This document shows, one piece after another, positions 42,440 through 62,921 of a stretch of DNA of 64,000 bases. The stretch is taken from positions 124,001 to 188,000 of the IMG/VR virus record IMGVR_UViG_3300047558_000137. One strand, 5' to 3'. The notes under the pieces were generated by a model. It had not been told where the DNA came from. It did no database searches and was given only the letters and a program-made list of their open reading frames with translations. The translations under genes were made by a program, and so were the position numbers. Each line of letters begins with the position of its first letter. The first letter of the stretch is position 1.

Positions 42440-42657
42440 AACCATCTCAAACTAAACAAGGTTGCATCTTCGCCACGCTTGAATGCAAAGTAAGGGCCAA
42501 CGTTGCGCCACTCACTGCTCTTAAAGTTTTCGTAACACCAGCGTTCTTTGGCACCAGTATCATCTTTGACTTCTACATGGTACGGCCAATATTTCTTGTT
42601 TAAAACTCTCATAAGGTGCATCTCATTTCGTTTCTGTGTGTAGTAACTTAACTCCAT
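42436..42657 (-). CDS. FxLRW-array protein
   Basis: Ends EDATLFSLRWL. Confidence 0.75.
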   Translation of the reverse strand: MELSYYTQKRNEMHLMRVLNKKYWPYHVEVKDDTGAKERWCYENFKSSEWRNVGPYFAFKRGEDATLFSLRWL

Positions 42658-42878
42658 TTTAACACAAATTCCATTAAAGTTATATCATCGGCAAATAATA
42701 CAGTCATACCTTCTGATATTACTGTGTCTCTAGCATCGCACCAATCAGCAAATGCGTCGATATTATCTGCCCAAAATTTATAATCTGTCAGAATGACTAG
42801 TCGCTCGTCTGTATCCAATAATTCACTTGGAGCAATAATAAAACGGTGATGCCGCCACTCTTCAAATATATCTGTCAT
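42648..42878 (-). CDS. FxLRW-array protein
   Basis: Ends TLMEFVLKWS. Confidence 0.75.
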   Translation of the reverse strand: MTDIFEEWRHHRFIIAPSELLDTDERLVILTDYKFWADNIDAFADWCDARDTVISEGMTVLFADDITLMEFVLKWS

Positions 42879-43114
42879 AGATATTTGATCCTAAAGAATG
42901 TTTCTGCAGCCTCATCGTAGAAGTCTAAGCAGATCATTTCTCTATGTTGATGGCGGCCATCTGTATCGGTGACCCAGTCTTGGTGGTAGCGTGTAGTGAA
43001 TCCAAGTTCGCGCCGCATAACTTCGCGAATCATAAAGACGCTGGGCTTGGTCTTATATTCTTCTTTAATTCGTTTGCGTATGCGTGTCCATTCACGCTCA
43101 TTTAAGGATATCAT
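42875..43114 (-). CDS. FxLRW-array protein
   Basis: Ends AAETFFRIKYL. Confidence 0.7.
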   Translation of the reverse strand: MISLNEREWTRIRKRIKEEYKTKPSVFMIREVMRRELGFTTRYHQDWVTDTDGRHQHREMICLDFYDEAAETFFRIKYL

Positions 43115-43349
43115 ACTTTAACTTAAACCAAGTTGCATCAGATTCAGTTAGTGTTGCTACAATTTTGTACCTATAACTGTAGGTTGTATTATCTAAGTGC
43201 AGGGCCCAGTAAGGTTCTTCAACGGCATTTTCCATTACCCACTTACCAGCGTCAGTCTGTTGCCATTCCCAAATTGGTTGGGCAGCATATATTTCTGGGT
43301 CGTCTACATCGCCCATGCTGAAGGTGTGAACTATTAATTTTACCGCCAT
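43098..43349 (-). CDS. FxLRW-array protein
   Basis: Ends DATWFKLKYDILK. Confidence 0.7.
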   Translation of the reverse strand: MAVKLIVHTFSMGDVDDPEIYAAQPIWEWQQTDAGKWVMENAVEEPYWALHLDNTTYSYRYKIVATLTESDATWFKLKYDILK

Positions 43350-46899: not shown

Positions 46900-48702
46900 T
46901 TAAACTCGTGTAATTTTATTTTTCGTTGAATACAACTTACGGAATATAAACTTTTTAAAGTCTTTAATATTTGGTGTGCTCGGCTCAATTTGGTACTGGA
47001 ACGCACCCCGATCCCACGTTTCTATATCAACATCAGTATCAACTGTTAAAGGATAAGATACAGAATCCCGATACATTGAATTAGTCTGTAGCTGATAGAT
47101 AGAATCGGGTATATTGGTTAAACTTCTGGCAACACTGGTTGTTAGGTCAAATGTAAGATCCAAATGATCGTAGAGATATTCGGAATTTAAGTTATGATAA
47201 AGCCCATGCCCATTTTTTCGAAATGATTCAAGATCCTTTATTTCCCCAGTTGATAGATATTGGTGTATAATATTTCTAGACTTGACAAACTGTTCGGCAA
47301 AGTCTCCTATGCGGAATTGTTCGAACAGTTGATCGTAGAATTGTCTATAGGATATACCTAATACGTTTCTGCAATACTTGGCATACAGATGACTATAGCC
47401 ATGTATGTGAAAATTAATAACAGTGGCCGCATATAGATAACCATCAACAATGTCATCTAGGCTCATAGTGTCGGTTGACTGTACCAATTCCATATCTTCA
47501 TCGATACCACGCCAGTCATCTTGGTGATATAGTGTAACAAAATCTCTTACTGTTACAGATTTAATACCATACTGCTGTCTGCTGGCAGGTTGAGATAATT
47601 CACTGTTTTCCAATAGTTGAGCAAAAAATACTTCAATGGTTTGATGCTGTCCCATTTCTAGCGTATCAGCTATGCCCTGCTTCCAGGACTCTAGTGTTTC
47701 ATTGGGCAGACCAATAATTAATTCTGTATAGGTTGGTATCTTGTGCTGTTGGCTCAACTTCATTAACTTCTGTACATCATTAATGGCAAGATTTTTACGT
47801 TTGATTGCATCTAAGGTATTGTCGTTGTTACTTTGTAATGCCACAGTAACACCTTTGCTATAAGGACCTATTACTCGCGCAATTTCAAATGCATTTTCTG
47901 AACTGTTCTTAGGATACTGAATATTGACAGAACTGATCATACTGTTATCTGCGGCCTCACGTATCATGTGTGCTATTTCAAGATCTCTTTTGAACAATAT
48001 ACCAAAGTTGGCATCTGCTACAAATATATGCACAACAGGATTTGCTCGAGCCCAGTCTAGTTCTGCTTGTATATGCTCTAACTGAAACTTTTTTATTTTT
48101 GAGTATGTAACTCCGCCCCAATCGCAAAACGTGCATGAATAAGGGCATCCACGATTGGTTTCTAATGTCATTGCCCAGACAAAGTTGGGATTGTCTTTGA
48201 CGATTTGATCAAACACTCCTGAGGTATATGCACTTGGAATGTCTAGGTCTTGTAGTCGTTGTCGTTGATAAAACGGTTCTATAGGTCGATTGGCAGCAAT
48301 GTCTCGAAGTATGGCAGTGAAGTTTTCCTCACCTTCGCCCATGATAATGCAGTCAATGAATTTATGCTGTATTAATTTACCGCTGGGTTCTGCTCCACCA
48401 AATACAATAACACAATCAGGCCAACGTTGTTTAATTTCTTGGGCCAATGTTAGACAATAATTTTTATTCCATATATAACAGCTAAACCCGCATAAGACAG
48501 GATCCGACATTCGTGCCAATACATCTTCAACAGGTTCTCTGCGGAATATAATATCAGCTAAATGGAATTGTTCACGTATGTCAGAAAAATGGGTTGCATA
48601 ACTCCATATGCAACCCACACTGTACGGTAGCCAATAAGTATTTTCGTCTCTATATTCAACACCGTACTGTGGTTGAAATAGATATACGTTTGATTTTGTC
48701 AT
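46900..48702 (-). CDS. B12-binding domain radical SAM protein
   Basis: LCGFSCYIWN, VFGG.EP, IMGEGE, ETNRGCPYSCTFCDWG (CxxxCxxC), ELIIGLPNET. Confidence 0.9.
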   Translation of the reverse strand: MTKSNVYLFQPQYGVEYRDENTYWLPYSVGCIWSYATHFSDIREQFHLADIIFRREPVEDVLARMSDPVLCGFSCYIWNKNYCLTLAQEIKQRWPDCVIVFGGAEPSGKLIQHKFIDCIIMGEGEENFTAILRDIAANRPIEPFYQRQRLQDLDIPSAYTSGVFDQIVKDNPNFVWAMTLETNRGCPYSCTFCDWGGVTYSKIKKFQLEHIQAELDWARANPVVHIFVADANFGILFKRDLEIAHMIREAADNSMISSVNIQYPKNSSENAFEIARVIGPYSKGVTVALQSNNDNTLDAIKRKNLAINDVQKLMKLSQQHKIPTYTELIIGLPNETLESWKQGIADTLEMGQHQTIEVFFAQLLENSELSQPASRQQYGIKSVTVRDFVTLYHQDDWRGIDEDMELVQSTDTMSLDDIVDGYLYAATVINFHIHGYSHLYAKYCRNVLGISYRQFYDQLFEQFRIGDFAEQFVKSRNIIHQYLSTGEIKDLESFRKNGHGLYHNLNSEYLYDHLDLTFDLTTSVARSLTNIPDSIYQLQTNSMYRDSVSYPLTVDTDVDIETWDRGAFQYQIEPSTPNIKDFKKFIFRKLYSTKNKITRV

Positions 48703-48714
48703 CAACCGTATTTA

Positions 48715-49233
48715 TTAGTTACTTACTACCCTTGCTACAGAATTAATAACACTGGCAATACGTCCGATATCGCGAAGTTGTTCTACGGTGTAGCCCATCT
48801 TCTTTAATCCTTCATAGTGTGCCTTAACACAAAAGTGGCACTTACCAACAATACTTGCAGCCAAACTATAGGCTTCAAAACGTTCTTTGGTTGTACCGCC
48901 ACTGGTACTGATAGCGTTCATACGCAACTGTGCCGGCAATCCTTTTAACTGCTCATCGTCGGCCATTTCAACATAAGGATACCATATGTTGTTTTGTGCC
49001 ATTAATGCGCCAGCCGTAAGTGCTGCCTGTGTTTCAGTTTTGTTGGCAATTTGGCTTTCCATCCAAGTCCATAGCTTGCTGTTACCTGTTGCAAAAGCTG
49101 CCGCTAAGGCCACAGCTTCTGCTTCTTCTACTGGTAGTGTGCTACGCTTGATTACTGCGTCAATGTTTAATTTTGTATCTTTTGCATAGTCAGGAATACT
49201 GGCTTCCTTTAATGCATCTACCCATGCTGTCAT
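48715..49233 (-). CDS. ahpD: Alkylhydroperoxidase AhpD
   Basis: IPDYAKDTKLN, MAQNNIWY, LAASIVGKCHFCVKAH. Confidence 0.9.
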   Translation of the reverse strand: MTAWVDALKEASIPDYAKDTKLNIDAVIKRSTLPVEEAEAVALAAAFATGNSKLWTWMESQIANKTETQAALTAGALMAQNNIWYPYVEMADDEQLKGLPAQLRMNAISTSGGTTKERFEAYSLAASIVGKCHFCVKAHYEGLKKMGYTVEQLRDIGRIASVINSVARVVSN

Positions 49234-49243
49234 TTTGTTTTCC

Positions 49244-49471
49244 TTACGTTAATGCTTTAAAAGAGCCTACTAGATAGATTACAACCACAACTAGTTCTAC
49301 TATGATTAGGCTCCATTTCTTCCATATAAATCCTAACCAGAGCCATAATAGATTGGCAGCTAGACAGACAAATATATTAATAGGATAATAGTTAAAACTT
49401 GTTAACCAAACACCCAACAACAGTATTAGTGTAGCTGACCATTCTACTATAAACTCTAGGTTAAATTTCAT
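49244..49471 (-). CDS. Small membrane protein (3 TM)
   Basis: Hydrophobic; EWSAT...YP.N...W..WG. Confidence 0.55.
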   Translation of the reverse strand: MKFNLEFIVEWSATLILLLGVWLTSFNYYPINIFVCLAANLLWLWLGFIWKKWSLIIVELVVVVIYLVGSFKALT

Positions 49472-50016
49472 TAAAGTGTTTCACCACCGATTGGGCGTGA
49501 GCATGGGCACAACTCGCCAGTTTGCAATGCATCTAATACACGCAATGCTTCGTCTGGGTTACGGCCAACATCCAAGTTGTTTACTGTAACGTGTTGGATG
49601 ATGTTGTCTGGGTCAACAATAAATGTTGCACGTAGTGCGGCACCTGCTGGACCATAGAAGATACCCAATTGCTCGGCCAAGCTGTTTTCGTCGCGAGCTA
49701 CGTCAGCAAATGACCAGCTGTTAGTTTTCTTCAAGTCTTCGTGTGCGTTACGCCAAGCCAACTTGCAGAACTCATTGTCTGTTGAGCCGATTAGCAATAC
49801 TGCATCACGGTCAGCAAAGTCCGAATTCAACTTGTCGTAGGCTACGATTTCAGTTGGACATACAAAAGTAAAGTCCTTTGGATAATAAACGATTACTTTC
49901 CATTTACCTTCAAAGCTCTTGTCTGTGATGGTTTCAAATGCGCCGTCTGGTGTCAATGCGCCTGGCTTAACGCCTGTTACTGCAAAACTTGTGATTTTGT
50001 CGCCGATAGTTTTCAT
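49471..50016 (-). CDS. ahpC: Peroxiredoxin AhpC
   Basis: YYPKDFTFVCPTE, ALRATFIVDP, VGRN, TGELCP. Confidence 0.95.
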   Translation of the reverse strand: MKTIGDKITSFAVTGVKPGALTPDGAFETITDKSFEGKWKVIVYYPKDFTFVCPTEIVAYDKLNSDFADRDAVLLIGSTDNEFCKLAWRNAHEDLKKTNSWSFADVARDENSLAEQLGIFYGPAGAALRATFIVDPDNIIQHVTVNNLDVGRNPDEALRVLDALQTGELCPCSRPIGGETL

Positions 50017-50041
50017 TTTAGTTTCCTTTAAGTTAATGAAT

Positions 50042-50386
50042 TTATTTTTGTGATCTGCAATTTGGGCAAATCAATTCTAAGTTAGATTCGTCATTATTGT
50101 AACTGTTGTTGTCTTTGTATTCTACTACCAAAGGTGCAGGTTCTCCTTGCCATTCTGTAATACCGCAACGTTCGCATTTGTGACCACGTTCTTGGATCAA
50201 ATATTTTTTAACCCAATCTGGCACTTGCCTCCAAGCTGATGGCTCTTTGGCCATTTTCCAATCGTTAACCAATTGGCGGCTGCGGTGTTGTTGTTGACAA
50301 CTATTGTTGCAGTATTTGTTAGTATAACTATTACCTTTGATAGGATTGTTACGACCACAATTCAAACAAGTAAAACAACGTGACAT
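50042..50386 (-). CDS. HNH-like zinc-binding protein, catalytic His residues apparently lost
   Basis: KCERCG...LVVEYKDNN..NN..SNLELICPNCR. Confidence 0.65.
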   Translation of the reverse strand: MSRCFTCLNCGRNNPIKGNSYTNKYCNNSCQQQHRSRQLVNDWKMAKEPSAWRQVPDWVKKYLIQERGHKCERCGITEWQGEPAPLVVEYKDNNSYNNDESNLELICPNCRSQK

Positions 50387-52735: not shown

Positions 52736-53093
52736 ATGGTACCGGTTGCCATCCTAACTTTAGAAAGTCTTCACGAACATCGTCAGCAACAAATCCTTCG
52801 TTACCTGAACAGTAGTAGTCCATGTAATCTTCGTTGCGTCTAGCTATATGTGCCATCATGCCTCCTGCATAGCGCCAGGTACATGACCAAGTGTCGTCTT
52901 TAAGGATAGGCATAACTTCACGCTTTTGCCATTGCATATTGCAGAGTGCCGCATAGACTCTCTGTGCATAATCATAGTCTGTACGAATCTTTGCAACAAT
53001 CCAGTCGCAATCTTCTAATTCATGCTCTAGACTAGGGCTTGTCATGACAGTACTCGAATGTGTGTTACATTGGCGGTACGGAAACTGCGCCAT
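52713..53093 (-). CDS. Hypothetical protein, paralog of 46108-46476
   Basis: YAQRVYAALCN...WSCTWR.AG...EDYMDYYCSGNEG.V..D. Confidence 0.6.
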   Translation of the reverse strand: MAQFPYRQCNTHSSTVMTSPSLEHELEDCDWIVAKIRTDYDYAQRVYAALCNMQWQKREVMPILKDDTWSCTWRYAGGMMAHIARRNEDYMDYYCSGNEGFVADDVREDFLKLGWQPVPFDDEDLV

Positions 53094-53341
53094 TCACTTT
53101 TATCCAAACACCAAACACTCATTGACTTTGGATCGTGTATGCGTGTTTCATGTAGTTTGGCTGCATCACGTGCAGGCAATGCTGATGCCATTAATGTGCA
53201 GGGCATTGTACGCTTTTCGCCATTTACTTTTGTAAAGGTTACTTCGCATTGATGTTTCCAAAGTAAGTTTTGGATTTCGCGGAATCGTGTATCCAAATCA
53301 AAGTCTGGATTGTCATTGTTAAATTCGTAGTCTAAACTCAT
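53042..53341 (-). CDS. Sm/SH3-like (WYL-related) phage protein
   Basis: VTFTKVNGEKRTMPCTL...VWCLDKSEWRSFR. Confidence 0.65.
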   Translation of the reverse strand: MSLDYEFNNDNPDFDLDTRFREIQNLLWKHQCEVTFTKVNGEKRTMPCTLMASALPARDAAKLHETRIHDPKSMSVWCLDKSEWRSFRTANVTHIRVLS

Positions 53342-53952
53342 TGTATACCTCGTCCTAGTATTGTACCATATTCTGGATTTTCCTCAGTGTACAAGACCTG
53401 ATATCCGTTGTTTAACAGCAACGGAACCACAGCGCCACATTTGCCACTGTAATGTCCCCAGTATTTGTTGTACCAAGTGTCATCGCATACCACAATACTC
53501 TGTTCAGCCATTGCAGGTAGTGCGTAGACCATTTGTTGCAGATGTGCAGCCTGACTATTGACGTTGTTCATTTCAAAGCCCAACTGTTTATAGCGGACCT
53601 GTTGATCACGTACAAAGTCTTCAGTCTTTTCTGGGTGCCAGTCCCAATCAAAGTTATCCAAGTACAAAAAGCTAATGTAAGCAATATGACTGGGAAAATG
53701 TTTGAGATAAGATTCGCCAGTTTGGTTAATGACCTCTACGTTGGGGATGTCTTGTTCAATAACAAAGTTACAGTTATTGATGTCCATATCCACTGTAAAC
53801 AGGCTTTTACCAAATCTAGAGGCCCACTCAGCAATGGTTTTTGTACTACCGTCATCGCCATTACGACTTGTGCCAATTTCTACAAACTGGCCAATGTAGT
53901 CCGGATCAAATTGATCTAGATACTGCTCGGCTCGACGGAATACTTGTCCCAT
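53338..53952 (-). CDS. SAM-dependent methyltransferase-like protein
   Basis: FVEIGTSR..GST, FTVD, FLYLD, VVCDDT, GKCG.VVP. Confidence 0.65.
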   Translation of the reverse strand: MGQVFRRAEQYLDQFDPDYIGQFVEIGTSRNGDDGSTKTIAEWASRFGKSLFTVDMDINNCNFVIEQDIPNVEVINQTGESYLKHFPSHIAYISFLYLDNFDWDWHPEKTEDFVRDQQVRYKQLGFEMNNVNSQAAHLQQMVYALPAMAEQSIVVCDDTWYNKYWGHYSGKCGAVVPLLLNNGYQVLYTEENPEYGTILGRGIQ

Positions 53953-54169
53953 TACTTAGACTGATTGCGGCTAGTGCGTTGGCGGCTTTCGCTTTGAAGA
54001 ACTTCAACAAAGCTACGGACAAATGCGCCACGAACGTGACGATCTGGGATAGTGCTAGCCCGGCGCTTTACTTCTTTGGTCAGTTTAACTGCCTTGGGAT
54101 CGTAACCTTTACATGTCATTTTGTTTTCCTTAGTTAAATGAATATTTTACAATAATTATCTTAAAAAGT

Positions 54170-54403
54170 CTAGGCTTTGTCAGCTAGAACGTTGAAAGTT
54201 TGTTCGTGTTTATACACGTTGGCAATAGGAACTACATATCCACGATCAAGTGCCCAGTTAAGTGAGTCTCGGACCGATGTTGGGCAATCGTGTTTAATGG
54301 CCAGCATTGCCCGTGGAACAAGCCTTACTCCGTCAACAAGATTGTAACCTTCATCTCCGGGTTGCAAGGCAGTTGTGTTGGATTCGTGCAGGATATAAGT
54401 CAT
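54170..54403 (-). CDS. Hypothetical protein
   Basis: ORF track; TAG stop. Confidence 0.55.
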   Translation of the reverse strand: MTYILHESNTTALQPGDEGYNLVDGVRLVPRAMLAIKHDCPTSVRDSLNWALDRGYVVPIANVYKHEQTFNVLADKA

Positions 54404-54445
54404 TTAATGACAAACTCAATTACCATGATTAGAATAGCAGCCATT

Positions 54446-54676
54446 TTATACTCCAAAATGTTTTTGTATTGCTTCTAGGTAGTTGTCAGTTCCAAGATGT
54501 TGGTTACCGTTGTCAATCTTGTCATAGATGCCGGCACATTCTTTGACAATCAACAGGGCGAATTTTTCCATATTGTCGGTAATAGGCAAATGCTCTAGTT
54601 TGGCAGTATAAATCCCGGTACTATCTAAACTAAAGCCACTCTTTTTAGCAAGTTCTCGAATTCGTTCGCTCATCAC
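54446..54676 (-). CDS. HFGVEE-family small protein
   Basis: MSERIRELA...EKFALLIVKEC...KHFGV. Confidence 0.7.
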   Translation of the reverse strand: MMSERIRELAKKSGFSLDSTGIYTAKLEHLPITDNMEKFALLIVKECAGIYDKIDNGNQHLGTDNYLEAIQKHFGV

Positions 54677-54909
54677 TTACCCCATAACATTAAGAAACGC
54701 CAGATAACAAGTTCGTACATGGTCTGTCCCTGCATGTTACGCACTCGACCGAAAAGAAAATAGCTGGTCTTTTCTTTTTCACGATCAGTAATATGTGTCC
54801 AACAATCGTTGGCCCAATTTACTGAAAATAAATAACCAAACAGAGTAAAATACCTAGGCTCATTCGGGCAAGGATAGGTATTAAAGTATTCTCGGGCACG
54901 TTCACTCAT
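54673..54909 (-). CDS. Hypothetical protein
   Basis: ORF track, coupled. Confidence 0.55.
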   Translation of the reverse strand: MSERAREYFNTYPCPNEPRYFTLFGYLFSVNWANDCWTHITDREKEKTSYFLFGRVRNMQGQTMYELVIWRFLMLWGK

Positions 54910-55139
54910 TCTATCAAACTCCTTATAAGTTCTTGCTGAGATTGCTCTTTGTTCATAGTTGACAATAAGTATAGCATTTGCGATTCGTCTGCAATAACTT
55001 CTTCGTCTTCCCCGTTAGGGCTTTGGATAATTTTGCTTTCAATAAATTGATACTGTGCGCTGTCTTCGCCGAAGAAGAGTTTACACAATGTCTTGTATGA
55101 CCCTAGTGTGCTAGGCATGCCAGTACTAAGAGTTATCAC
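54906..55139 (-). CDS. Hypothetical protein
   Basis: STLGSY...GEDEEVIADESQM. Confidence 0.6.
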   Translation of the reverse strand: MITLSTGMPSTLGSYKTLCKLFFGEDSAQYQFIESKIIQSPNGEDEEVIADESQMLYLLSTMNKEQSQQELIRSLIE

Positions 55140-56437
55140 AGTTTTTCTCCTGGGTTAAATCCGCGGAATCGCAGGAATCGGGGGAAGCGCAAACTATAGG
55201 TACCATCTTGGTTCTGTGTAATAGCATCTGCTCTTACTTCAACAATTTGACCAAGGCACTTAGTACGATGATTCCAAAACTCAATTCGATTATCATCGCT
55301 AAAGCCACTACCAACGTTGACTGTAATCTTGCGTTCGTCGTCCACACCTGAGCAAACAAATGCTCCCAGGCGTCCGACATTACGTCCAGTACCTTCTTCA
55401 ACATCAATGACCTCCAAACTAACCTCAATAAAAGGTTTCTGCTTGAGCCAGGCCACACTGCGTTTACACTCGTAGACAGCATCGGGATCTTTGATCATAA
55501 TGCCTTCATACCCTCCAGCAATGGCAGTGGCGTTAATTTCTTTAAAGCGAGCAAGTCCTTGGTTAGTGTCTAGATCAACAAGTTCTTGCCCTAGTACACT
55601 TACATTGGGCATGTGTTCTGCAATAGGTGCAATCCACGCACGAAGTTGGGCACTGCGTTGGTGTTGCGTTTTAGTGCTAACACCTGCTTGGAACTCGCTT
55701 AGTGGCAGAATGTCAAACAGATTGAGTACTGCATCGTCGGCTTTAACATCACCTTTGCGATGGATCTGCTTCATTAGATCTTGGAAGTTGCCTGACATAA
55801 TCTCACCGTCAAGCACCATTGGCTCTTTAAAGAAGATAGCATGTTTGGCAATCTGTTGCTTAACTGTTTCAAAGTTAACCAGCTCTTTGCCGTTGCGGCT
55901 ATATTGATCAACCTGTCCATTGGGATAGGCGATTGTGATAACACGGACACCGTCTAGTTTAACTTCAATGAGTTTTTGGCCCGAAACCTTGCTTTCGTGC
56001 TTGGCCCCATCATGTGCTAGCTGGCATTCAAATACAGGCACATGATAGCGGGCATCTGCGTGTTTGTTGACAGTTGAGTCACTAGTACCACAGCGCATAT
56101 CCTTAATAAGAATACGGCGGTACCAACGATTCCATTCAGCTTCGGTTGCCTTTTGGCGCATATGGTTAACTGCGGCAATGGCGTTATTACCAGTTAGTTC
56201 ACGTTTACGAAGTTGTTCAGCAAACAGCCAAAATGTTTCGGGCTTGAGTCCGGCTCCGTCGCCAGTCTTTTCTTCGACCTTTTTAACACCAAAGGTAATC
56301 ATAGCATCGTAAGCATAACGAAAGCCTTTAAACAGCTCGTCATTGCCTGCGGCACTTTCACGTTGGATAACAGATTCCTTAAACAGGCGACTGTTGTCGC
56401 TTTCAAGTTCTGCAATTACATCCCAAGGTTTATTCAT
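55136..56437 (-). CDS. lig: ATP-dependent DNA ligase
   Basis: EVKLDGVR (KxDG), LDGE, EGIMIK, WLKQK, GSGF, SLRFPRF. Confidence 0.95.
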   Translation of the reverse strand: MNKPWDVIAELESDNSRLFKESVIQRESAAGNDELFKGFRYAYDAMITFGVKKVEEKTGDGAGLKPETFWLFAEQLRKRELTGNNAIAAVNHMRQKATEAEWNRWYRRILIKDMRCGTSDSTVNKHADARYHVPVFECQLAHDGAKHESKVSGQKLIEVKLDGVRVITIAYPNGQVDQYSRNGKELVNFETVKQQIAKHAIFFKEPMVLDGEIMSGNFQDLMKQIHRKGDVKADDAVLNLFDILPLSEFQAGVSTKTQHQRSAQLRAWIAPIAEHMPNVSVLGQELVDLDTNQGLARFKEINATAIAGGYEGIMIKDPDAVYECKRSVAWLKQKPFIEVSLEVIDVEEGTGRNVGRLGAFVCSGVDDERKITVNVGSGFSDDNRIEFWNHRTKCLGQIVEVRADAITQNQDGTYSLRFPRFLRFRGFNPGEKL

Positions 56438-56777
56438 AGTCGTACTCTTTGTTCAATTGTTCCACTGCCGCGTCCATGATGATTTCATCAAATGCCAGTT
56501 CAGTTCGATTATACATTACTTGACTATATTCTTTACCATAGTTGCCAGTGATTTTGTATTGGCTGGCACCAAATTTAAATGCCTTAGGAAACTCACGACC
56601 ACGATTGCCCAATCCGTTGTTGTACAGATCGTAGTAGCAGTTCATTGCAATACGAAAACGTTCTAGAGCAGGATTGTTTTTAACATCAACTACTGGACCC
56701 ATTGTGGGAATACGCTTGTGCAGAGCATCTGCAAGTGCTTGATATCGACCGTTGCCGCTCCAGTATGTTTTTTCCAT
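56430..56777 (-). CDS. Hypothetical protein
   Basis: AGGAG SD; TGTTATAAT promoter upstream. Confidence 0.6.
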   Translation of the reverse strand: MEKTYWSGNGRYQALADALHKRIPTMGPVVDVKNNPALERFRIAMNCYYDLYNNGLGNRGREFPKAFKFGASQYKITGNYGKEYSQVMYNRTELAFDEIIMDAAVEQLNKEYDYE

Positions 56778-56843
56778 TTCCAACTCCTGTTGTGTTTTGC
56801 TATGTCTAAATTATAACATGATTTTGGGCAAATTTTACCCAAA

Positions 56844-56860
56844 TGTTGCAAAAATACAAC
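56844..56860. promoter_or_regulatory. Second copy of TGTTGCAAAAATACAAC element
   Basis: Identical to inverted copy at 17189-17205. Confidence 0.45.
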
Positions 56861-56866
56861 GTAGTA

Positions 56867-57181
56867 TTAAGTATTACTTTTGCCCGCTTCTTTTAGCGTA
56901 TCAAACAGCATGAGCTTTTCATGTGCCGCTTTGATTGTATCAAAACGATCCTGCAGGTTTACAATTGATTTGCCAACCGAATGTAATTGATTTACATCAA
57001 GTGAGCGCAGAGCATCTAGTGTAGAGTAGGCTGCGGCCAGATCAATTTCTGCGCCAACCATAGCGTATTCTTTACGCCACTCATTGTCGTAACTGCTAGA
57101 GTAGCCGCGTAGGCGAACAATTTCTGCTTCAGTTACTTCGCACATACGGCGCCCATGGCCCATGTCTGCAATAATTTTCAT
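56867..57181 (-). CDS. Hypothetical protein
   Basis: Starts at conserved GGAGTTGAAGAATGA junction. Confidence 0.6.
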   Translation of the reverse strand: MKIIADMGHGRRMCEVTEAEIVRLRGYSSSYDNEWRKEYAMVGAEIDLAAAYSTLDALRSLDVNQLHSVGKSIVNLQDRFDTIKAAHEKLMLFDTLKEAGKSNT

Positions 57182-57384
57182 TCTTCAACTCCAAAATGTT
57201 CTCTAACAGACCCACCAGGATCAACTCCTCCCCTGTCTGCTTGGTTAGCGCAGACTTGGATTATCATTATCGCAAAGTCATACAATGACTTTCGGTCAGT
57301 TTCAAACAAGCCAGTGCTGGCATCGTATTGCAGTCCTGGCACCATTCTAATGTAGTCATTGATACGGTGTATATTTTCGTTCAT
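57178..57384 (-). CDS. HFGVEE-family small protein
   Basis: MNENI...FAIMIIQVC...REHFGVEE. Confidence 0.7.
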   Translation of the reverse strand: MNENIHRINDYIRMVPGLQYDASTGLFETDRKSLYDFAIMIIQVCANQADRGGVDPGGSVREHFGVEE

Positions 57385-57387
57385 TCT

Positions 57388-57636
57388 TCAACTCCTTGGA
57401 TATCGAGTAAATCCAAAATTCTTCAAAACTTCTCGGGTAACATCAATCTCGGGATCAATGCCTTGTGTTTGATATGCCCGTGTTAGACGGCCAAATTCAG
57501 CAACTTGATCTAATGTATCACGCACAATCAACTCGGCGAACTTTTCTTTGTCAAACGAGTAATATACTGTTTCATCAACACCAATTGAGTCTACATAAGT
57601 GCATGACTCAATAAGCTGTTCAATTCGTTTGTTCAT
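57388..57636 (-). CDS. HFGVEE-family protein, junction motif out of frame
   Basis: MNKRIEQL...EKFAELIVR; ends PRS. Confidence 0.7.
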   Translation of the reverse strand: MNKRIEQLIESCTYVDSIGVDETVYYSFDKEKFAELIVRDTLDQVAEFGRLTRAYQTQGIDPEIDVTREVLKNFGFTRYPRS

Positions 57637-57857
57637 GGTACCCTCACAAAATCAACATTTTCCACAGCATCGGTAGCAAACACTCCACTTTGATTGCGAC
57701 TGCCGACGACACCATGCGTACTCAGGTAGTATTGGTTATTTGGCATTAGTGATGCATAGATTTCGTCACCTGATTTCACGCCTTCTCCGGCAAACTTTCG
57801 TAATGCCTTTGCTTTAAAAACAACAAGAAGGTCGGGATTACTGTTTCGTATAATCAT
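57633..57857 (-). CDS. Hypothetical protein (unrelated cargo between junctions)
   Basis: Starts at junction motif. Confidence 0.55.
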   Translation of the reverse strand: MIIRNSNPDLLVVFKAKALRKFAGEGVKSGDEIYASLMPNNQYYLSTHGVVGSRNQSGVFATDAVENVDFVRVP

Positions 57858-58069
57858 TCTTCAACTCCAAACTGTTCTTTTAATTCTGCGAGAGCATCTT
57901 CTGCCAGGTTATCATCTTCTATGAACGGAGATATTGTAGTCCAACAATCACGAATAATCAACTCGGCGAACTTTTCAGCAAAAAGCATTGTCAGTTTCAT
58001 TTCACCGAATTTCCCACCAAATACTTGTTCGCAGGACTGTTCAGCAAGTAGTTTAATTCGTTCGTTCAT
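57854..58069 (-). CDS. HFGVEE-family small protein
   Basis: MNERIKLLAEQ...EKFAELIIRDC...EQFGVEE. Confidence 0.75.
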   Translation of the reverse strand: MNERIKLLAEQSCEQVFGGKFGEMKLTMLFAEKFAELIIRDCWTTISPFIEDDNLAEDALAELKEQFGVEE

Positions 58070-58236
58070 TCTTCAATACTGAAATGTTTCTTAATCGTAG
58101 CCAATTGTAGTATAGCCTTCTTATCCCAAGGGTTTCGTTTTACTTTGTCCTCAAAATAACGAATGTCATCCACTGTAGCATGTTCTGGGACAGTGTTCAT
58201 ATCAACGTCTGTAGTAAGTTTATATTCTTCGTTCAT
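58066..58236 (-). CDS. Mosaic 56 aa protein with family ends and unrelated middle
   Basis: Hand translation MNEEYKLTTD...IKKHFSIEE; ATGA overlaps on both sides. Confidence 0.65.
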   Translation of the reverse strand: MNEEYKLTTDVDMNTVPEHATVDDIRYFEDKVKRNPWDKKAILQLATIKKHFSIEE

Positions 58237-58433
58237 TCTTCAACTCCGAAATGTTCTTTGTATCGGTTTAGCATCCGTTCAAAGGCGTTGAACGCCAACT
58301 CTTGTTTGTTCAGTTCGATGCATTCCTTGATAATCAACTCGGCAAATTTTTCAAAATTGAATCCGATTTCGCCACAGTCACAAATAGTTCGACCTTCGCA
58401 TTGGTCGGCAAGTTCTAAGATTCGTTCGTTCAT
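58233..58433 (-). CDS. HFGVEE-family small protein
   Basis: MNERILELA...EKFAELIIKEC...EHFGVEE. Confidence 0.75.
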   Translation of the reverse strand: MNERILELADQCEGRTICDCGEIGFNFEKFAELIIKECIELNKQELAFNAFERMLNRYKEHFGVEE

Positions 58434-58678
58434 TCTTCAACTCCGAAATGTTCTTCAATCTCGTTTATAATCTCCTGGTACGGAGTAGCCCTGCGGCACA
58501 TTTTCGCACCCATACCTGTTTGATCGTCATACACTTTATCTACAATGTCAATACATTCACGCACAATCAACTCGGCAAACTTTTCAATATCTTCAGCATG
58601 CCAAGGCCCAACTATATAGAATTTAGCAAAGTCTGGGTTGGCCTGTTCAGCAAGTAGTTTAATTCGTTTGTTCATCAT
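58430..58678 (-). CDS. HFGVEE-family small protein
   Basis: MNKRIKLLAEQA...EKFAELIVREC...EHFGVEE. Confidence 0.75.
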   Translation of the reverse strand: MMNKRIKLLAEQANPDFAKFYIVGPWHAEDIEKFAELIVRECIDIVDKVYDDQTGMGAKMCRRATPYQEIINEIEEHFGVEE

Positions 58679-58878
58679 TCAACTCCGAAATGTTCGTTCA
58701 AAACCATTGCCCAATCCAAGTCACTGCGTCCAATAAACTCAGGAGAGTTAAGATATTGACCACATTCCTGCACAATCAATTCGGCAAACTTTTCCATAAA
58801 CTTTGTCTGCCCCGCCCAAGAAGGATCGGGTTCGAGTTTGGCTGCTTGGTCCCAAAGTTGTCGAATTCGTTCGTTCAT
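58675..58878 (-). CDS. HFGVEE-family small protein
   Basis: MNERIRQL...EKFAELIVQEC...EHFGVE. Confidence 0.75.
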   Translation of the reverse strand: MNERIRQLWDQAAKLEPDPSWAGQTKFMEKFAELIVQECGQYLNSPEFIGRSDLDWAMVLNEHFGVE

Positions 58879-59081
58879 TAATATTTCCTTAATTGCTTAA
58901 GACCGATTACACCACAATGATCACATTTTCGTGCCTGGTAATCAATATCGTACCCGCCTTCTCTGCGATGCATAGGTTTAGACCACTTAGTCCACTTATG
59001 TAATCCTAGCCAACACCATCGCCCCGTGGCTAGGAGCTCTTCGTCCTTTAGGAGACGAAAGGTGTTTTCGGCTTCGTTCAC
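58878..59081 (-). CDS. Hypothetical protein
   Basis: CWLGLHKWTKW...CDHC. Confidence 0.55.
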   Translation of the reverse strand: MNEAENTFRLLKDEELLATGRWCWLGLHKWTKWSKPMHRREGGYDIDYQARKCDHCGVIGLKQLRKY

Positions 59082-59365
59082 GATGCATTACCTGCACTAT
59101 CATAGTTGTAGAAGCGACCCGCTTCATCATTCCAATGGCGTGTGTCGTAGTACTGTGCTGATACAGTATATCCTAGTAGGCCAAGTTCCAAGTTCATGCC
59201 AGCGTGATCTTGTCTAATAGCCCATCTAAACGATAAGCTAATAATTGTAGTATCACGATAGACTTCAAATTCTACAGCCTTCTTGCCAAGAACTGCACTG
59301 CGGTTGTAGATATTGTCCCAACGATCACTAAATGGATTGCTTAAATTAAAACTAAAATTAATCAT
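59078..59365 (-). CDS. Hypothetical protein
   Basis: QDHAG...YDTRHW. Confidence 0.6.
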   Translation of the reverse strand: MINFSFNLSNPFSDRWDNIYNRSAVLGKKAVEFEVYRDTTIISLSFRWAIRQDHAGMNLELGLLGYTVSAQYYDTRHWNDEAGRFYNYDSAGNAS

Positions 59366-59702
59366 TTTTCAACTCCGAAATGTTTTCTTCATACCACTTA
59401 TCAGTTTGTTCCTGGATAAGTTCTTCCAATGCAATAACACTATTGACCCCGCACTCAACAACGCCTTCTTCACGCTCAGTGCGAACCTTGAGTTGTGGGT
59501 GAAATGGATTTGTTCGCCCTTCAACGGTTGAATCCCGAACAGGAATATACTGACTGCGAACACGCTCAATACATTCCCGAATAATCAACTCAGCGAACCT
59601 TTCGTTGTATAGTTGGTCAAACTCTTTGTCACCACGTTTACTGCCAGACAAGACAGTATCACGAAATGCCTGTTCAGCAAGTTTTTTAATTTGTTCGTTC
59701 AT
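59358..59702 (-). CDS. HFGVEE-family protein, junction motif out of frame
   Basis: MNEQIKKLAEQA...ERFAELIIREC; CATTTCGGAGTTGAAAAATGA read in another frame. Confidence 0.7.
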   Translation of the reverse strand: MNEQIKKLAEQAFRDTVLSGSKRGDKEFDQLYNERFAELIIRECIERVRSQYIPVRDSTVEGRTNPFHPQLKVRTEREEGVVECGVNSVIALEELIQEQTDKWYEENISELKND

Positions 59703-60034
59703 GCTTTCTCCTGTAAGATTTCCCATACATGCGCTTTTTCAATTCGATCAGCGTACTCTGTTCTACATCCGTCAACATCTTTAAGCCAACGATGAACTGA
59801 TGATGTGCTACCCCATGCAGCACTAGGAATAGCGTGTCCAAGAAACTTGACAATATCTATTAGTGCTTCTCGATTAATATGATCGGCGCTCCAAGCCGCA
59901 CCTGCTAGGTCATTAGACAATACTGACGTAAGAAACCTTCCGGGCTCGTAGCCGCGTAACAGATAATCTTCTAGTGCCCGTGCTGTGTGCTCAGGAACAC
60001 CAGTGCCATCGTATTTGAGAAGTAGTTTTGACAT
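59699..60034 (-). CDS. Hypothetical protein
   Basis: YLLRGYEPG.FL..VL.NDL..A; leaderless TGCTATAAT-N6-ATG. Confidence 0.65.
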   Translation of the reverse strand: MSKLLLKYDGTGVPEHTARALEDYLLRGYEPGRFLTSVLSNDLAGAAWSADHINREALIDIVKFLGHAIPSAAWGSTSSVHRWLKDVDGCRTEYADRIEKAHVWEILQEKA

Positions 60035-60079
60035 GTGCTAATTATAGCACAGATTGGATTTTATTCTAGGTAATACTTT

Positions 60080-61186
60080 TTACTTACCCAAACAGTAATG
60101 CTTACTGAATACACCCTTGGTACGCAATAACTGGTTTGGCGATACTGCCACAAACGCATTTAGGTACTCTAAGAATGGTTTATCGGATGCAAGATTGTAA
60201 ATTCCCTTGATGTAATTTAATGCCAACGGATCGTGGCTTTTAAATTTCTCTTGCAGTACTGGCTCAGCAGTAGACAGATCTGTGTTATCTACTATTCCAT
60301 TGGAATCTAATGAAATTGACAATATCTTAGTGTGTACTTGTTTCTGTAATGCACTAACGCCGGGTGTTAATTCATCGTGGCGTCCACACGAACGAGCAAA
60401 TCCCCTGTGCCCAGAAACACCTTCAGGGAATAGGTGTTCAGCTTCTGTGCCTTCATATAATTCAACTGGCAACTTAGACACAGCCTGTTTTAATAAATGG
60501 CTTTGTTTAAGTAAAATTTTGGGTTCTAAAAAGAAACATTCTAATCTGTTGTCAGCACCAAATACCTGTCGCATTGGTAAGTCTTTTTGTCTAGACCACC
60601 ACAGACCATTTTTGTATATTAGGAATGGTTTTTCATGTCCCGAAATCATTGCCCAATTTCGGCCATTATATTTTTGTTCGCATTGAATATTAGCAACAGG
60701 GTCAGTTACACAATTAGTAAATGTTCTAATGTCTCCGAGATTTTTGTAAACCCAGTCTTCACTGTCGATAAACTGTTCTCTAATACTGCTATCTAATTTG
60801 TCAACAAATGATAACTTAGTCGTTTTATCCCAATGATTATTAATTAGCCAATTAAATTGAGATGCTGGCATATATTTGAGATCGGCATTGCCAACACATA
60901 TAATTTCATCTATGTGAATTTTGTTTCTAGCAAATACATTATAAATTGTTTGGCTATCAGTGCCGCCGGACCAATAGAATACTAGTATGTCATACTTGTC
61001 CCTGATCCTACGTGCATGTTGATCCATCAATTCTTCAATTGATTCAGTTGGATTAACGGTCCAATCTAATTTGTCGTACTCGGCGGTATTGCAATAGAAT
61101 TGTACAGGTGCACCGCTTAGATAACTTTCGTATTGGGCCAGATATATATTATGGAAACGTTTTCCATTTACTATATAGTAGTACAT
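60080..61186 (-). CDS. PP-loop protein, paralog 3
   Basis: YDILVFYWSGGTDS, IHIDEI. Confidence 0.6.
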   Translation of the reverse strand: MYYYIVNGKRFHNIYLAQYESYLSGAPVQFYCNTAEYDKLDWTVNPTESIEELMDQHARRIRDKYDILVFYWSGGTDSQTIYNVFARNKIHIDEIICVGNADLKYMPASQFNWLINNHWDKTTKLSFVDKLDSSIREQFIDSEDWVYKNLGDIRTFTNCVTDPVANIQCEQKYNGRNWAMISGHEKPFLIYKNGLWWSRQKDLPMRQVFGADNRLECFFLEPKILLKQSHLLKQAVSKLPVELYEGTEAEHLFPEGVSGHRGFARSCGRHDELTPGVSALQKQVHTKILSISLDSNGIVDNTDLSTAEPVLQEKFKSHDPLALNYIKGIYNLASDKPFLEYLNAFVAVSPNQLLRTKGVFSKHYCLGK

Positions 61187-62124
61187 TATTGTTTGATATT
61201 ATAGTCGCGAAACAGTTGCAAATAACTATTAGCAATTCTGTTTTGATCGCGCATTAGATCTGTCGGCGGTGTGCTGTTAGGGTCAATAATAAATGAACGT
61301 ACTAACTCCTGCTTAAATTCGCCTGCCATAAGGGTATGTATCTCTTTACGTAGACGTTGTACAACATCAGCCGGAGTTCCTGCAGGTGCCCAGACTCCAA
61401 ACCATTGGTCACGGCCAGCAAACTGTGGGTATCCTAAACTACGCAATGTTGGTACTCCGGGCAATTCACGATATGGCTGGTCTGCTACTACAGCAATAGC
61501 TCGTAGTTTGCCTGTCTGTACATGAGGTAACACAGCCTGAGGAACAGCAGTCATAAAGTCTAATTGACCACTTAACAAATCCTGTGTAGCCAATGGCTGT
61601 CCCTTATAAGGAACGTGCGTCATATTGGTGTTAGTAATTTGACTTAGCATAGCAGAGAATACGTGTTGAGCATTACCTGCGCCAGGCGAACCATAATTAA
61701 GAGTTCTTGTACGTGCAAGTTCAACTAACTGTCTAATATCCTGAATGCCTGAACTAGAATTTACTGCAACTACCATAGGTAACACTGTCCCAACATAGGC
61801 CACAGGAATTAAATCTGTTTTGTAGTCGTAAGGCGGATCAGTCATAAAGTGTGTGCTTATGGCCAATACTGCCACCGAGCTTAACAACAATGTGCGACCA
61901 TCTGGTGTGCTTTTTGCCACGTGTGCAGAACCAATTGTAGTGTTTGCACCTGGACGGTTTTCTACAATTACAGGACGTTCTGATGTGGACATATTTTTTG
62001 CTAGTAATCTAGCAATAGTATCATTACCGCCGCCGGGACTATATGGAACTACAATTTTAGTTTCGTTTGCATGAACACACAAAGAAATTGCCATAGAAGC
62101 AATTACAATTATTTTTTTAATCAT
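61186..62124 (-). CDS. tctC: Bug/TctC substrate-binding protein
   Basis: Signal peptide; VVPYSPGGGNDTIARL, VENRPGA, PDGRTLL, HVPYKG, GKLRAIAV, WFGVWAPAGTP. Confidence 0.92.
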   Translation of the reverse strand: MIKKIIVIASMAISLCVHANETKIVVPYSPGGGNDTIARLLAKNMSTSERPVIVENRPGANTTIGSAHVAKSTPDGRTLLLSSVAVLAISTHFMTDPPYDYKTDLIPVAYVGTVLPMVVAVNSSSGIQDIRQLVELARTRTLNYGSPGAGNAQHVFSAMLSQITNTNMTHVPYKGQPLATQDLLSGQLDFMTAVPQAVLPHVQTGKLRAIAVVADQPYRELPGVPTLRSLGYPQFAGRDQWFGVWAPAGTPADVVQRLRKEIHTLMAGEFKQELVRSFIIDPNSTPPTDLMRDQNRIANSYLQLFRDYNIKQ

Positions 62125-62142
62125 TGGATATATGTATTTGAA

Positions 62143-62475
62143 TAGTGGTAGCTTATTCTGTTACGAGGAAAGCTACCGAAACCCTAGGCGGCGTTTAGGC
62201 TACCAATGCGAACTGTGAGTCGTTTGCGTTTACTTTTTTGCTTCTACGGCCGGGAAACCCCAACCCTAAGGGCTTTCACATTGCCCTGCTGTCCACTCTG
62301 TTACTCTTGACCCAATCGATCCTGTGTCAGGCCCATTATAAAACACACTAAGCACGACTACATTGCCAAAAAGACCTGGAAGTCAAAAACAATGTACATA
62401 ATGTGTTTTATGGTGGACCTGGGCGGCACTGCCCCGCCGTCTTGAATCCTTTTCTCTTTGCTTCATACAGCAATA
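62143..62475 (-). ncRNA. ssrA: Circularly permuted (two-piece) tmRNA
   Basis: Acceptor piece ending CAGGTCCACCA at 62411 precedes coding piece starting GGGCCTG at 62334 (G3:U70, A73); tag ANDSQFALVA* at 62227-62195; outer limits approximate. Confidence 0.88.
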
Positions 62476-62477
62476 AC

Positions 62478-62921
62478 TTAATACTCTTCTACTTTAACAA
62501 TCTTTGCGGCAGTTGTCAAATATTCCCACACACTTTCATTGTAGTGTGGCTTACCTGCCCAATAGTTTTCTGCCGCTGATTTAACTTCAGCACTGTCAAT
62601 TGCATGTCCGTCACCGATTAACATACTTACTTCACTGCCCCAGTTTAGATCGTGACGTTGCACAGGACCTTCTGGGACTACAGTAAATAACCAATCAGTT
62701 GCACCACCAGCTAAATCTACATCATCTGGATCGCTACACATAAAAACACTTTGCTTATGTGATAGCATGTTTTGTGGACGATACATTTCCAATGGACGAT
62801 AAAAGTCCGTATGCCCCCAATTGGCCTCATAGTTGTTGCGTGGGGTTAGAACTGTACCTACTGGTAATTCTGTGGAACTGCCGTGGTAAAATGTTGGACT
62901 AGTAATCTCTGTAATACGCAT
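62478..62921 (-). CDS. ADP-ribosyltransferase-fold protein (Arr-like)
   Basis: FYHGSSTELPVGTVLTP, VFM, E-Y near C-terminus. Confidence 0.5.
   Translation of the reverse strand: MRITEITSPTFYHGSSTELPVGTVLTPRNNYEANWGHTDFYRPLEMYRPQNMLSHKQSVFMCSDPDDVDLAGGATDWLFTVVPEGPVQRHDLNWGSEVSMLIGDGHAIDSAEVKSAAENYWAGKPHYNESVWEYLTTAAKIVKVEEY

What the first reader, a model, noticed from the sequence alone, without database searches (positions are those of the whole stretch)
57178..59702. Second cassette-like array with a junction conserved at DNA level, even out of frame
Genes start MN[EK]RI, carry EKFAELI..EC and end HFG[VI]EE, joined by GGAGTTGAAGAATGA (SD plus stop/start overlap). In two genes (57388, 59358) the motif persists although read in another frame. 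Unrelated cargo (57633-57857, the middle of 58066-58236, 56867) is bounded by the same junction. This points to a nucleotide-level role as a coupling and recombination module, independent of the FxLRW array but with the same logic. A detached member lies at 54446.
Basis: partly seen in the sequence, partly recalled or inferred. Interest (0 to 1): 0.7.

Follow-up and report, generated by a model that had tools for sequence, protein, structure and literature searches.

The report
Shuffling gene array joined by ribosome-site junctions
A giant T4-type freshwater phage carries head-to-tail arrays of tiny genes whose stop/start junction (ribosome binding site plus overlapping stop and start codons) is kept letter-for-letter across hundreds of phages and marks the places where genes and half-genes have been swapped between phages.

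Summary
Window 56867-59726 (minus strand) holds 8 members of a small helical protein family (MNERI / EKFAELIVREC / HFGVEE) plus 4-5 unrelated small ORFs. The joining 15-mer GGAGTTGAAGAATGA occurs exactly 5 times in the window (0.1 expected). The 374-kb genome, a T4-type jumbo phage, has 17 exact copies in three arrays.

The 15-mer is a GGAG ribosome binding site, a 7-nt spacer and an ATGA stop/start overlap.

Its conservation is at DNA level:
- Synonymous sites are fixed: GGA 19/19 and GTT 19/19 in loci not chosen by DNA pattern.
- Copies persist out of frame or after non-family ORFs (49 of 255 contexts).

The family is large and unannotated (9,250 clusters at 50% identity, viral, freshwater).

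Between related metagenomic phages, blocks of high nucleotide identity start or stop at the junction (65 ends against 7.8 expected). They also stop at a second island inside the gene, the FAELI island (39 against 6.4). Cassettes appear in permuted order, and half-gene chimeras outnumber whole-gene matches (49 to 2).

There is no promoter, stem-loop, inverted repeat or integrase.

Best reading: a translational-coupling junction that also serves as microhomology for general recombination. This resembles T4-type PeSL shuffling but uses a different element. The proteins' function is unknown.

The parts
59358..59726 (-). First family member, long variant; the likely start is the ATG at 59702 (MNEQIKK..ERFAELIIREC). 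Its tail is read out of frame through the junction copy.
   Evidence: family HMM E 1e-29. The homologue L125:8301-8648 (73% nt) ends ENILGDEA* with its own GGAG/ATGA.
59362..59376 (-). Junction copy with 1 mismatch (GGAGTTGAAAAATGA). It is read as SELKND by the upstream ORF and serves as the start region of cargo 59078-59365.
   Evidence: A homologue of the same cargo (MINFNF..) in L047 is also preceded by an exact 15-mer, with only 6 open codons upstream.
59078..59365 (-). Cargo ORF, 95 aa, not a family member.
   Evidence: 39% homologue in L122; no family HMM hit.
58878..59081 (-). Cargo ORF, 67 aa, GTG start, not a family member.
   Evidence: homologues in L124 and L129, at other positions.
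58675..58878 (-). Family member ending HFGVE*.
58672..58686 (-). Junction variant with 2 mismatches (GGAGTTGAATGATGA); it still has an ATGA overlap.
58430..58678 (-). Family member, 81-82 aa; this is the member that was modelled.
   Evidence: all-helical, pLDDT 86; the FGVEE tail has low confidence.
58430..58444 (-). Exact junction 15-mer.
58553..58585 (-). FAELI island: a second nucleotide-conserved island inside the gene. Equivalent islands lie at about 59571-59603, 58762-58798, 58321-58353, 57944-57976 and 57518-57546.
   Evidence: Intragenomic blastn. Crossover enrichment at this island.
58233..58433 (-). Family member. Its 3' half (58233-58343) is 91% identical to the 3' half of array-B gene 203354-203578, while the 5' halves are unrelated.
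58233..58247 (-). Exact junction 15-mer. An independent contig (L202) is identical to this genome up to the last base of this copy and then continues as array-B cargo.
58066..58236 (-). Mosaic ORF, 56 aa: family-like start (MNEE) and end (KKHFSIEE) with an unrelated middle. It ends in a degenerate junction.
   Evidence: no family HMM hit.
57854..58069 (-). Family member ending QFGVEE.
57854..57868 (-). Exact junction 15-mer, serving as the start region of cargo 57633-57857.
57633..57857 (-). Cargo ORF, 74 aa (MIIRNSNP..VDFVRVP). A paralogue lies in array B (genome 203133-203357) between different family members.
   Evidence: 73% over 268 nt, running from the junction into the next gene's first codons.
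57388..57636 (-). Family member whose own end has decayed (NFGFTRYPRS*). It stops inside the next junction copy, out of frame.
57381..57395 (-). Exact junction 15-mer, not read as GVEE.
57178..57384 (-). Divergent family member (MNENIHR..FAIMIIQVC..HFGVEE).
   Evidence: E 1e-22.
57178..57192 (-). Exact junction 15-mer, serving as the start region of the last cargo ORF.
56867..57181 (-). Last ORF of the array, 104 aa cargo, followed by non-coding DNA.
54446..54676 (-). Detached family member, ending KHFGV* with GGAG, 6 nt and ATG.
   Evidence: (E 1e-26).

Best explanation
The region is a promoterless, co-directional array of small genes in a hyperplastic region of a T4-type jumbo phage.

Most genes belong to one very large, unannotated family of roughly 70-aa helical phage proteins. 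The last four codons and stop of each gene (GGA GTT GAA GAA TGA) are also the ribosome binding site (GGAG), a 7-nt spacer and the ATG of the next gene. Each gene therefore hands ribosomes to whatever follows it (translational coupling).

This junction island, the first codons after it, and a second roughly 30-nt island inside the gene (FAELIVREC) are kept at nucleotide level, while everything between them has diverged.

Because the same 25-55 nt recur hundreds of times, within a genome and across co-infecting relatives, they act as patches of microhomology for the phage's general recombination machinery. A RecA/UvsX-type gene is present. The outcome is:
- whole cassettes moved or replaced;
- unrelated ORFs dropped in behind a ready-made start region, often inheriting a GVEE tail;
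- half-genes exchanged at the inner island.

Shown: the anatomy, the DNA-level conservation and the breakpoint positions. Inferred: that coupling operates, that general recombination is the agent, and that selection on translation start keeps the sequence fixed.
For: Anatomy:
- Searches show the array and its junctions.
- The genome has 17 exact copies in three arrays and 18 family members.
- GGAG-to-start spacing of 7 nt is the genome's mode.

DNA-level constraint:
- In members ending GVEE*: GGA 251/253 (background 0.26), GTT 250/253 (0.40), GAA 252/253 (0.73), TGA 252/253.
- In loci selected through the ligase rather than by DNA pattern: GGA 19/19, GTT 19/19, CGA 23/27 of Arg codons (0.24), AAC 27/33 (0.40). 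The Phe codon just upstream varies freely, TTC 14 / TTT 5.
- Neighbouring genes of pattern-selected loci are only about 45% aa identical to this genome, yet the 23-mer is exact.
- Of 255 distinct junction contexts, 25 follow a non-family ORF in frame and 24 are out of frame or intergenic. 137 are followed by a non-family gene.
- The modelled protein's FGVEE tail has low confidence.

Recombination:
- Of 575 internal ends of blocks at least 150 nt long and at least 85% identical between different contigs, 65 lie at the junction island (null 7.8, maximum 16 in 1000 draws) and 39 at the FAELI island (null 6.4).
- Identity begins exactly at the 15-mer in L096/L012, L053/L017 and L025/L087.
- L042 and L075 share four cassettes at 91-96% in permuted order. 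L032 and L042 are 87-92% collinear for 7.4 kb and become mosaic inside the array.
- Among 220 family genes, 33 pairs match only in the 5' variable part, 16 only in the 3' part, and 2 in both.
- Inside this genome, the 3' half of 58233-58433 is 91% identical to that of 203354-203578. The MIIRNSNP cargo is duplicated between different neighbours.

Context:
- Gp23 capsid and T4 portal genes are present, as is a RecA-like gene.
Against: - No relative close enough to this exact genome was found to map an indel in array A itself. The only candidate (the end of L202) is equally explained by an assembly tip across a 51-nt shared stretch.
- The mosaics come from short-read metagenome contigs, where chimeric joins at repeats are possible. 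Several arrays are nevertheless re-assembled identically in independent samples.
- A generic ribosome binding site in this genome does not need the particular spacer letters. Translation start alone therefore does not fully explain why GTT and the first codons of the next gene are fixed.
- Coupling and recombination were not observed directly.
Confidence: 0.7

Rival explanations
1. The fixed letters are an RNA-level recognition site, for example for a translational repressor or for an endoribonuclease that cuts at GGAG start regions, as T4 RegA and RegB do (own knowledge). That would co-regulate all genes behind the junction. Recombination at the site would be a by-product.
For: The spacer and the first codons of the next gene are fixed, although generic GGAG start regions in the same genome tolerate any A/T there. 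One identical start region serves more than 130 unrelated downstream genes.
Against: No regulator was identified. There is no RNA structure (z-scores -0.7 to +0.8) and no Rfam match. This reading does not explain the conserved FAELI island inside the gene.
Confidence: 0.13
2. The mosaics are assembly chimeras. Short-read metagenome assemblers joined different strains at the repeated islands, so there is no real shuffling. The junction is then only a conserved start region of a paralogous family.
For: All comparison loci are metagenomic contigs. The islands are repeated 30-55 nt stretches. L202 ends 32 nt beyond a 51-nt stretch shared by arrays A and B.
Against: Arrays with several junctions are recovered identically from independent samples: L004/L066 over 8.4 kb, L017/L028, L081/L166, and L202 against this genome over 10.4 kb through four junction copies. 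Chimeric genes and the duplicated cargo exist within one 374-kb contig. The enrichment also holds for blocks of 85-95% identity, which are not strain-level variants.
Confidence: 0.07
3. Conservation is purely at protein level. HFGVEE is a functional C-terminal peptide, and the DNA identity follows from codon bias and recent duplication.
For: H and F are nearly invariant while their codons vary, so part of the motif is protein-level.
Against: GGA and GTT are fixed against backgrounds of 0.25 and 0.45. There are out-of-frame, intergenic and non-family copies. The copies sit in phages whose other proteins are about 45% identical. The tail is predicted with low confidence.
Confidence: 0.04
4. A dedicated site-specific cassette system of the integron type, with the 15-mer as the recombination site of a specialised recombinase.
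For: Promoterless cassettes lie in one orientation. Identity between contigs starts exactly at the 15-mer.
Against: The genome has no tyrosine recombinase. The array has no inverted repeats or hairpins. Crossovers are equally enriched at an island inside the coding sequence, which fits homology-driven rather than site-specific exchange.
Confidence: 0.03

Closest known systems
PeSL (promoter-early stem-loop) cassettes of T4-type phages (Arbiol et al. 2010, PMC2839356; Comeau et al. 2014, PMC4122927)
   Same: Short conserved regulatory sequences repeated at gene boundaries in hyperplastic regions of T4-type phages. Insertions, deletions and replacements of small ORFs of unknown function between relatives have their end points at these sequences. 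Exchange is attributed to homologous recombination. This genome is T4-type by capsid and portal.
   Different: A PeSL is intergenic and is made of a sigma-70-like promoter plus a terminator stem-loop. Here the element lies inside overlapping coding sequence and has no promoter and no stem-loop. It acts at the level of translation. It comes with a second crossover island inside the gene, so that half-genes are shuffled too. It is tied to one very large protein family.
Translationally coupled genes with an ATGA stop/start overlap and a ribosome binding site inside the upstream gene (general bacterial and phage operon feature; own knowledge)
   Same: GGAG 7 nt before an ATG that overlaps the upstream TGA.
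   Different: Ordinary coupled junctions are not identical letter for letter across hundreds of unrelated gene pairs and different phages, and they are not known as mosaic end points.
Integron gene cassette arrays
   Same: Promoterless cassettes in one orientation, unrelated cargo, and a repeated boundary sequence.
   Different: No integrase and no attC-type folded site. Exchange points also lie within genes.
Conserved boundary ('linker') sequences at mosaic joints of lambdoid phages (own knowledge, not checked in the paper library)
   Same: Short conserved sequences at gene borders where otherwise unrelated modules meet.
   Different: Those join large functional modules. Here single genes of about 200 nt and half-genes are exchanged, and the sequence is itself the translation start signal.

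Membership tests
PeSL cassettes (T4-type phages) | A sigma-70-like early promoter within the repeated motif | tested here: not met
   The promoter scan of 53000-62500 found 20 sites against 22.5 expected, and none at the junctions. The junction lies within overlapping coding sequence.
PeSL cassettes (T4-type phages) | A stable stem-loop (terminator or attenuator) in the motif | tested here: not met
   Folding of five junction contexts gave z-scores from -0.74 to +0.81. No inverted repeats of 12 nt or more within 120 nt. Terminator-like sites are not above expectation.
PeSL cassettes (T4-type phages) | Located in hyperplastic regions of a T4-type genome, next to small ORFs of unknown function | tested here: met
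   Gp23 and T4 portal genes are present. Gene content around the ligase differs in every relative examined. No Pfam, PHROG or NCBIfam hits for the array genes.
PeSL cassettes (T4-type phages) | End points of indels and replacements between relatives coincide with the motif | tested here: met
   65 block ends at the junction against 7.8 expected. Exact starts of identity at the 15-mer. Permuted cassettes.
PeSL cassettes (T4-type phages) | Small circular DNAs formed by exchange between neighbouring motifs | not testable with these tools
   This needs PCR or long reads on phage DNA. Joints seen in other metagenomes had sides under 35 nt and are unreliable.
Integron cassette array | An IntI-type tyrosine recombinase | tested here: not met
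   PF00589 gave no match in the 374-kb genome, while the controls were positive.
Integron cassette array | An attC site with imperfect inverted repeats that folds as a hairpin | tested here: not met
Integron cassette array | Promoterless cassettes in one orientation | tested here: met
   All array ORFs lie on the minus strand with overlapping stops and starts, and there is no promoter excess.
Translationally coupled junction | Stop codon overlapping the next start, with a ribosome binding site 5-9 nt upstream inside the upstream ORF | tested here: met
   GGAG + 7 nt + ATGA. Seven nt is the modal spacing genome-wide.
Translationally coupled junction | Downstream translation depends on upstream translation | not testable with these tools
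   This needs reporter fusions or ribosome profiling.
Any described protein family (Pfam, PHROGs, NCBIfam, PDB) | A significant profile or fold match | tested here: not met
   Only uncharacterised proteins of uncultured phages match by fold and by language-model features.

The most novel reading that the evidence does not exclude
The junction island and the family genes together form an integrase-free capture-and-express system. The island acts as a portable adaptor that travels with a gene as its start region. It lets the phage's general recombination insert that gene behind any family member in any co-infecting relative, where it is expressed at once by coupling. The family's conserved ends and inner island are maintained because this evolvability (cassette and half-gene shuffling of a host-interaction protein repertoire) is itself selected.
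Probability: 0.25. Interest if true: 0.75.

Novelty: new variant of a known kind. Interest (0 to 1): 0.55.

Why it matters
- It extends the idea of regulatory-motif-mediated modular shuffling in T4-type phages from transcription signals (PeSLs) to a translation signal that lies inside coding sequence. It also shows the same process working within genes, at half-gene scale.
- It flags a very large viral protein family (9,250 clusters at 50% identity) that has no annotation. The family's hypervariable middle and tandem expansion are what one expects of host-interaction or counter-defence proteins.
- It gives a simple reason why unrelated phage proteins can share a C-terminal peptide: the tail is the translated ribosome binding site of the next gene. 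That matters for annotation and for motif-based family calling.
- The 23-nt junction is also a practical marker for finding such arrays in freshwater viromes.

Tried and rejected
**No match or no signal**
- blastn of the region against GenBank phages: no match. tblastn of one family member: no match.
- Pfam, PHROGs and NCBIfam on family and cargo proteins: nothing significant.
- PDB by sequence profile: only chance hits to designed helical repeats.
- Foldseek against PDB: best E-value 2.
- Search for relatives through the 368-aa upstream gene: none.
- Rfam: none.
- RNA structure at junctions: none.
- Inverted repeats: none.
- The sigma-70-like promoter repeat that bounds a module replacement in relatives L105 and L160 is absent from this genome.

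**Inconclusive**
- Laying contigs of four other freshwater metagenomes on the region showed very high summed depth on the islands. It gave many 'joints' with sides under 35 nt, among them one that skips exactly 58069-58233. I do not count these as evidence, because they can come from other family copies.
- The end of contig L202, an array A/B hybrid, is ambiguous between a real recombinant and an assembly tip.

**Considered and rejected**
- A diversity-generating retroelement as the source of the variable middle. The differences are complete non-homology and length changes, not point substitutions.
- Another genetic code or programmed frameshifting. Nothing calls for either.
Full report
**What is there**

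On the minus strand of window 56867-59726, thirteen small ORFs follow one another with overlapping stops and starts. Seven share the pattern MNERI..LAEQA, EKFAELI(V/I)REC and HFGVEE, and match a family profile at E 1e-20 to 1e-29. An eighth member lies detached at 54446-54676. The ORF at 58066-58236 has family-like ends and an unrelated middle. Four ORFs are unrelated cargo: 59078-59365, 58878-59081, 57633-57857 and 56867-57181.

GGAGTTGAAGAATGA occurs five times exactly, and twice with 1-2 changes, always on the minus strand. Shuffles predict 0.1 copies.

The window is part of a single 374,314-bp virus record. That record has a T4-type major capsid and portal and is rated complete. Genome-wide there are 17 exact copies of the 15-mer, all on one strand, in three arrays: genome 181-183 kb (this window), 202.6-203.6 kb and 236.3-238.3 kb. 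There are 18 family members in all.

**What the junction is**

Read in the upstream gene, the 15-mer is G-V-E-E-stop. Read for the downstream gene, it is GGAG, seven bases, then an ATG whose A-T-G-A overlaps the TGA. Among GGAG-preceded genes of this genome the commonest spacing is also seven. By sequence, it is a translational-coupling junction.

The array region has no excess of promoter-like or terminator-like sites, no Rfam match, no RNA structure around the junctions and no inverted repeats.

**Conservation is at DNA level**

- *Inside the genome.* Paralogues are alignable as DNA only in two short islands. One is the junction with the first 10-15 codons of the next gene. The other is about 30 nt encoding EKFAELIVREC. 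Everything between them has diverged.
- *Across other phages.* The family has 9,250 clusters at 50% identity with E up to 0.001. These are viral and unannotated. In those loci only about a quarter of the neighbouring ORFs have a homologue in this genome, at about 45% amino-acid identity.
- *Codon counts in members ending GVEE.* The codons are GGA 251/253, GTT 250/253, GAA 252/253 and TGA 252/253. Backgrounds in the same genes are 0.26, 0.40 and 0.73 for the first three.
- *Control for how loci were chosen.* Those loci were chosen by the DNA pattern, so I repeated the count in 80 loci fetched through the neighbouring DNA ligase. The result was GGA 19/19, GTT 19/19, GAA 19/19, Arg CGA 23/27 (background 0.24) and Asn AAC 27/33 (background 0.40). 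The Phe codon just upstream varies, TTC 14 and TTT 5.
- *Where the motif sits.* Of 255 distinct junction contexts, 206 end a family member, 25 end a non-family ORF in frame, and 24 have fewer than 35 open codons upstream. 137 are followed by a non-family gene.
- *The two out-of-frame copies in the window.* Both fit this picture. The copy at 59362-59376 precedes a cargo gene whose homologue in L047 also carries an exact 15-mer behind only six open codons. The homologue of the upstream gene in L125 ends in a different, in-frame tail. The island therefore travels with the downstream gene as its start region.
- *What remains unexplained.* Generic GGAG start regions of this genome show only an A/T preference after GGAG. 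A ribosome binding site as such does not explain every fixed letter.

**Recombination at the islands**

No near-identical relative of this genome is available, apart from contig L202 from another sample. L202 matches for 10,446 nt through four junction copies. It parts from this genome exactly after the 15-mer at 58233-58247 and continues for 32 nt as the array-B cargo gene. Arrays A and B share 51 identical bases at that point, so this is either a real A/B recombinant or an assembly tip.

The comparison among the 198 fetched loci is clearer:

- Of 575 internal ends of blocks at least 150 nt long and at least 85% identical between different contigs, 65 lie at a junction island. Random placement gives 7.8 (largest of 1000 draws 16). 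A further 39 lie at a FAELI island, against 6.4 expected.
- In L096/L012, L053/L017 and L025/L087, unrelated flanks give way to 93-95% identity at the first base of the 15-mer. The identity ends at the next junction, at the FAELI island, or after the next gene's first codons.
- L032 and L042 are collinear at 87-92% for 7.4 kb and become a patchwork inside the array. L042 and L075 share four units at 91-96% in a different order.
- L105 has 1.09 kb, including two family genes, where L160 has 179 nt.
- Among 220 family genes, 33 pairs are at least 85% identical only in the 5' variable part and 16 pairs only in the 3' part. Just 2 pairs match in both.
- Within this genome, the 3' half of 58233-58433 is 91% identical to that of 203354-203578, while their 5' halves are unrelated. 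The MIIRNSNP cargo occurs in arrays A and B between different family members.
- Several arrays are assembled identically from independent samples. That argues against wholesale chimerism, though short-read assembly remains a caveat.
- The genome encodes a RecA/UvsX-type protein and no tyrosine integrase.

**The protein**

A model built from 83 sequences is all-helical (helices 3-12, 27-53 and 65-77; mean pLDDT 86). The last residues have low confidence. It matches nothing solved. Its only matches are uncharacterised proteins of uncultured phages. Its function is unknown.

**Interpretation**

The best-supported account is a coupling junction conserved as DNA, which serves with two neighbouring coding islands as microhomology for general recombination. 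The result is cassette-level and half-gene-level shuffling and the capture of unrelated ORFs behind a ready-made start region.

It works like the PeSL system of T4-type phages (PMC2839356, PMC4122927). It fails two of PeSL's defining features, the promoter and the stem-loop, so it is not a member of that class. It is not integron-like either.

Three points remain open:
- whether the fixed letters are held by translation, by an RNA-binding factor, or by the spread of the island itself;
- whether the shuffling is selected or incidental;
- what the proteins do.

Noticed in passing
window 33750-43340, minus strand: The other array (FxLRW family): at least 25 ORFs of 63-114 aa ending ..F.LRW[AS]*. 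The end is TTGAGGTGGKCATGA, that is a GAGGTGG ribosome binding site plus an ATGA overlap. The logic is the same as here: the conserved C-terminal peptide is the translated start region of the next gene. Relatives (L122, L123, L130, L132) carry long arrays of it.
   Followed up: partly
window 58233-58247 / locus L202 (JGI sample 3300043451, contig of 28,167 bp): An independent contig is identical to this genome for 10,446 nt. It diverges exactly after a junction copy into the start of the array-B cargo gene (genome 203357 downward) and ends 32 nt later. Arrays A and B share 51 identical bases there. It could be a recombinant or an assembly tip.
   Followed up: partly
window 61186-62124, minus strand: A 312-aa protein with a signal-peptide-like start that matches PF03401 (TctC/Bug periplasmic binding protein). 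This is an unusual auxiliary gene for a phage. By own knowledge the family is expanded in Burkholderiales, which may hint at the host.
   Followed up: no
L105:820-1400 and L160:9590-9630: Relatives carry a repeated sigma-70-like promoter (TTGACGGGT, spacer, TATAATACA) that bounds a replaced module, much like a PeSL. The motif is absent from this genome.
   Followed up: partly
window 36527-36604 (G000:160527-160604), minus strand: A weak second match to the Gp23 capsid profile (27.8 bits, profile positions 7-32 only) in a 117-aa open frame inside the FxLRW array region. It is probably a chance or N-terminal-peptide-like match.
   Followed up: no
window 48700-50100 (locus L201:18663-20249): Auxiliary genes downstream of the ligase region: AhpC/redoxin, a CMD-family protein and a B12-binding radical SAM protein. 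A WYL_2 domain protein lies further upstream (L201:15338-15637). These come from precomputed Pfam hits.
   Followed up: no
loci L056:7149, L111:9406, L022:7655 and others: Larger non-family proteins (75-120 aa) end in ..FKEHFGVEE or ..GVEE. This suggests the family's last 4-8 codons have been grafted onto other genes along with the junction.
   Followed up: partly
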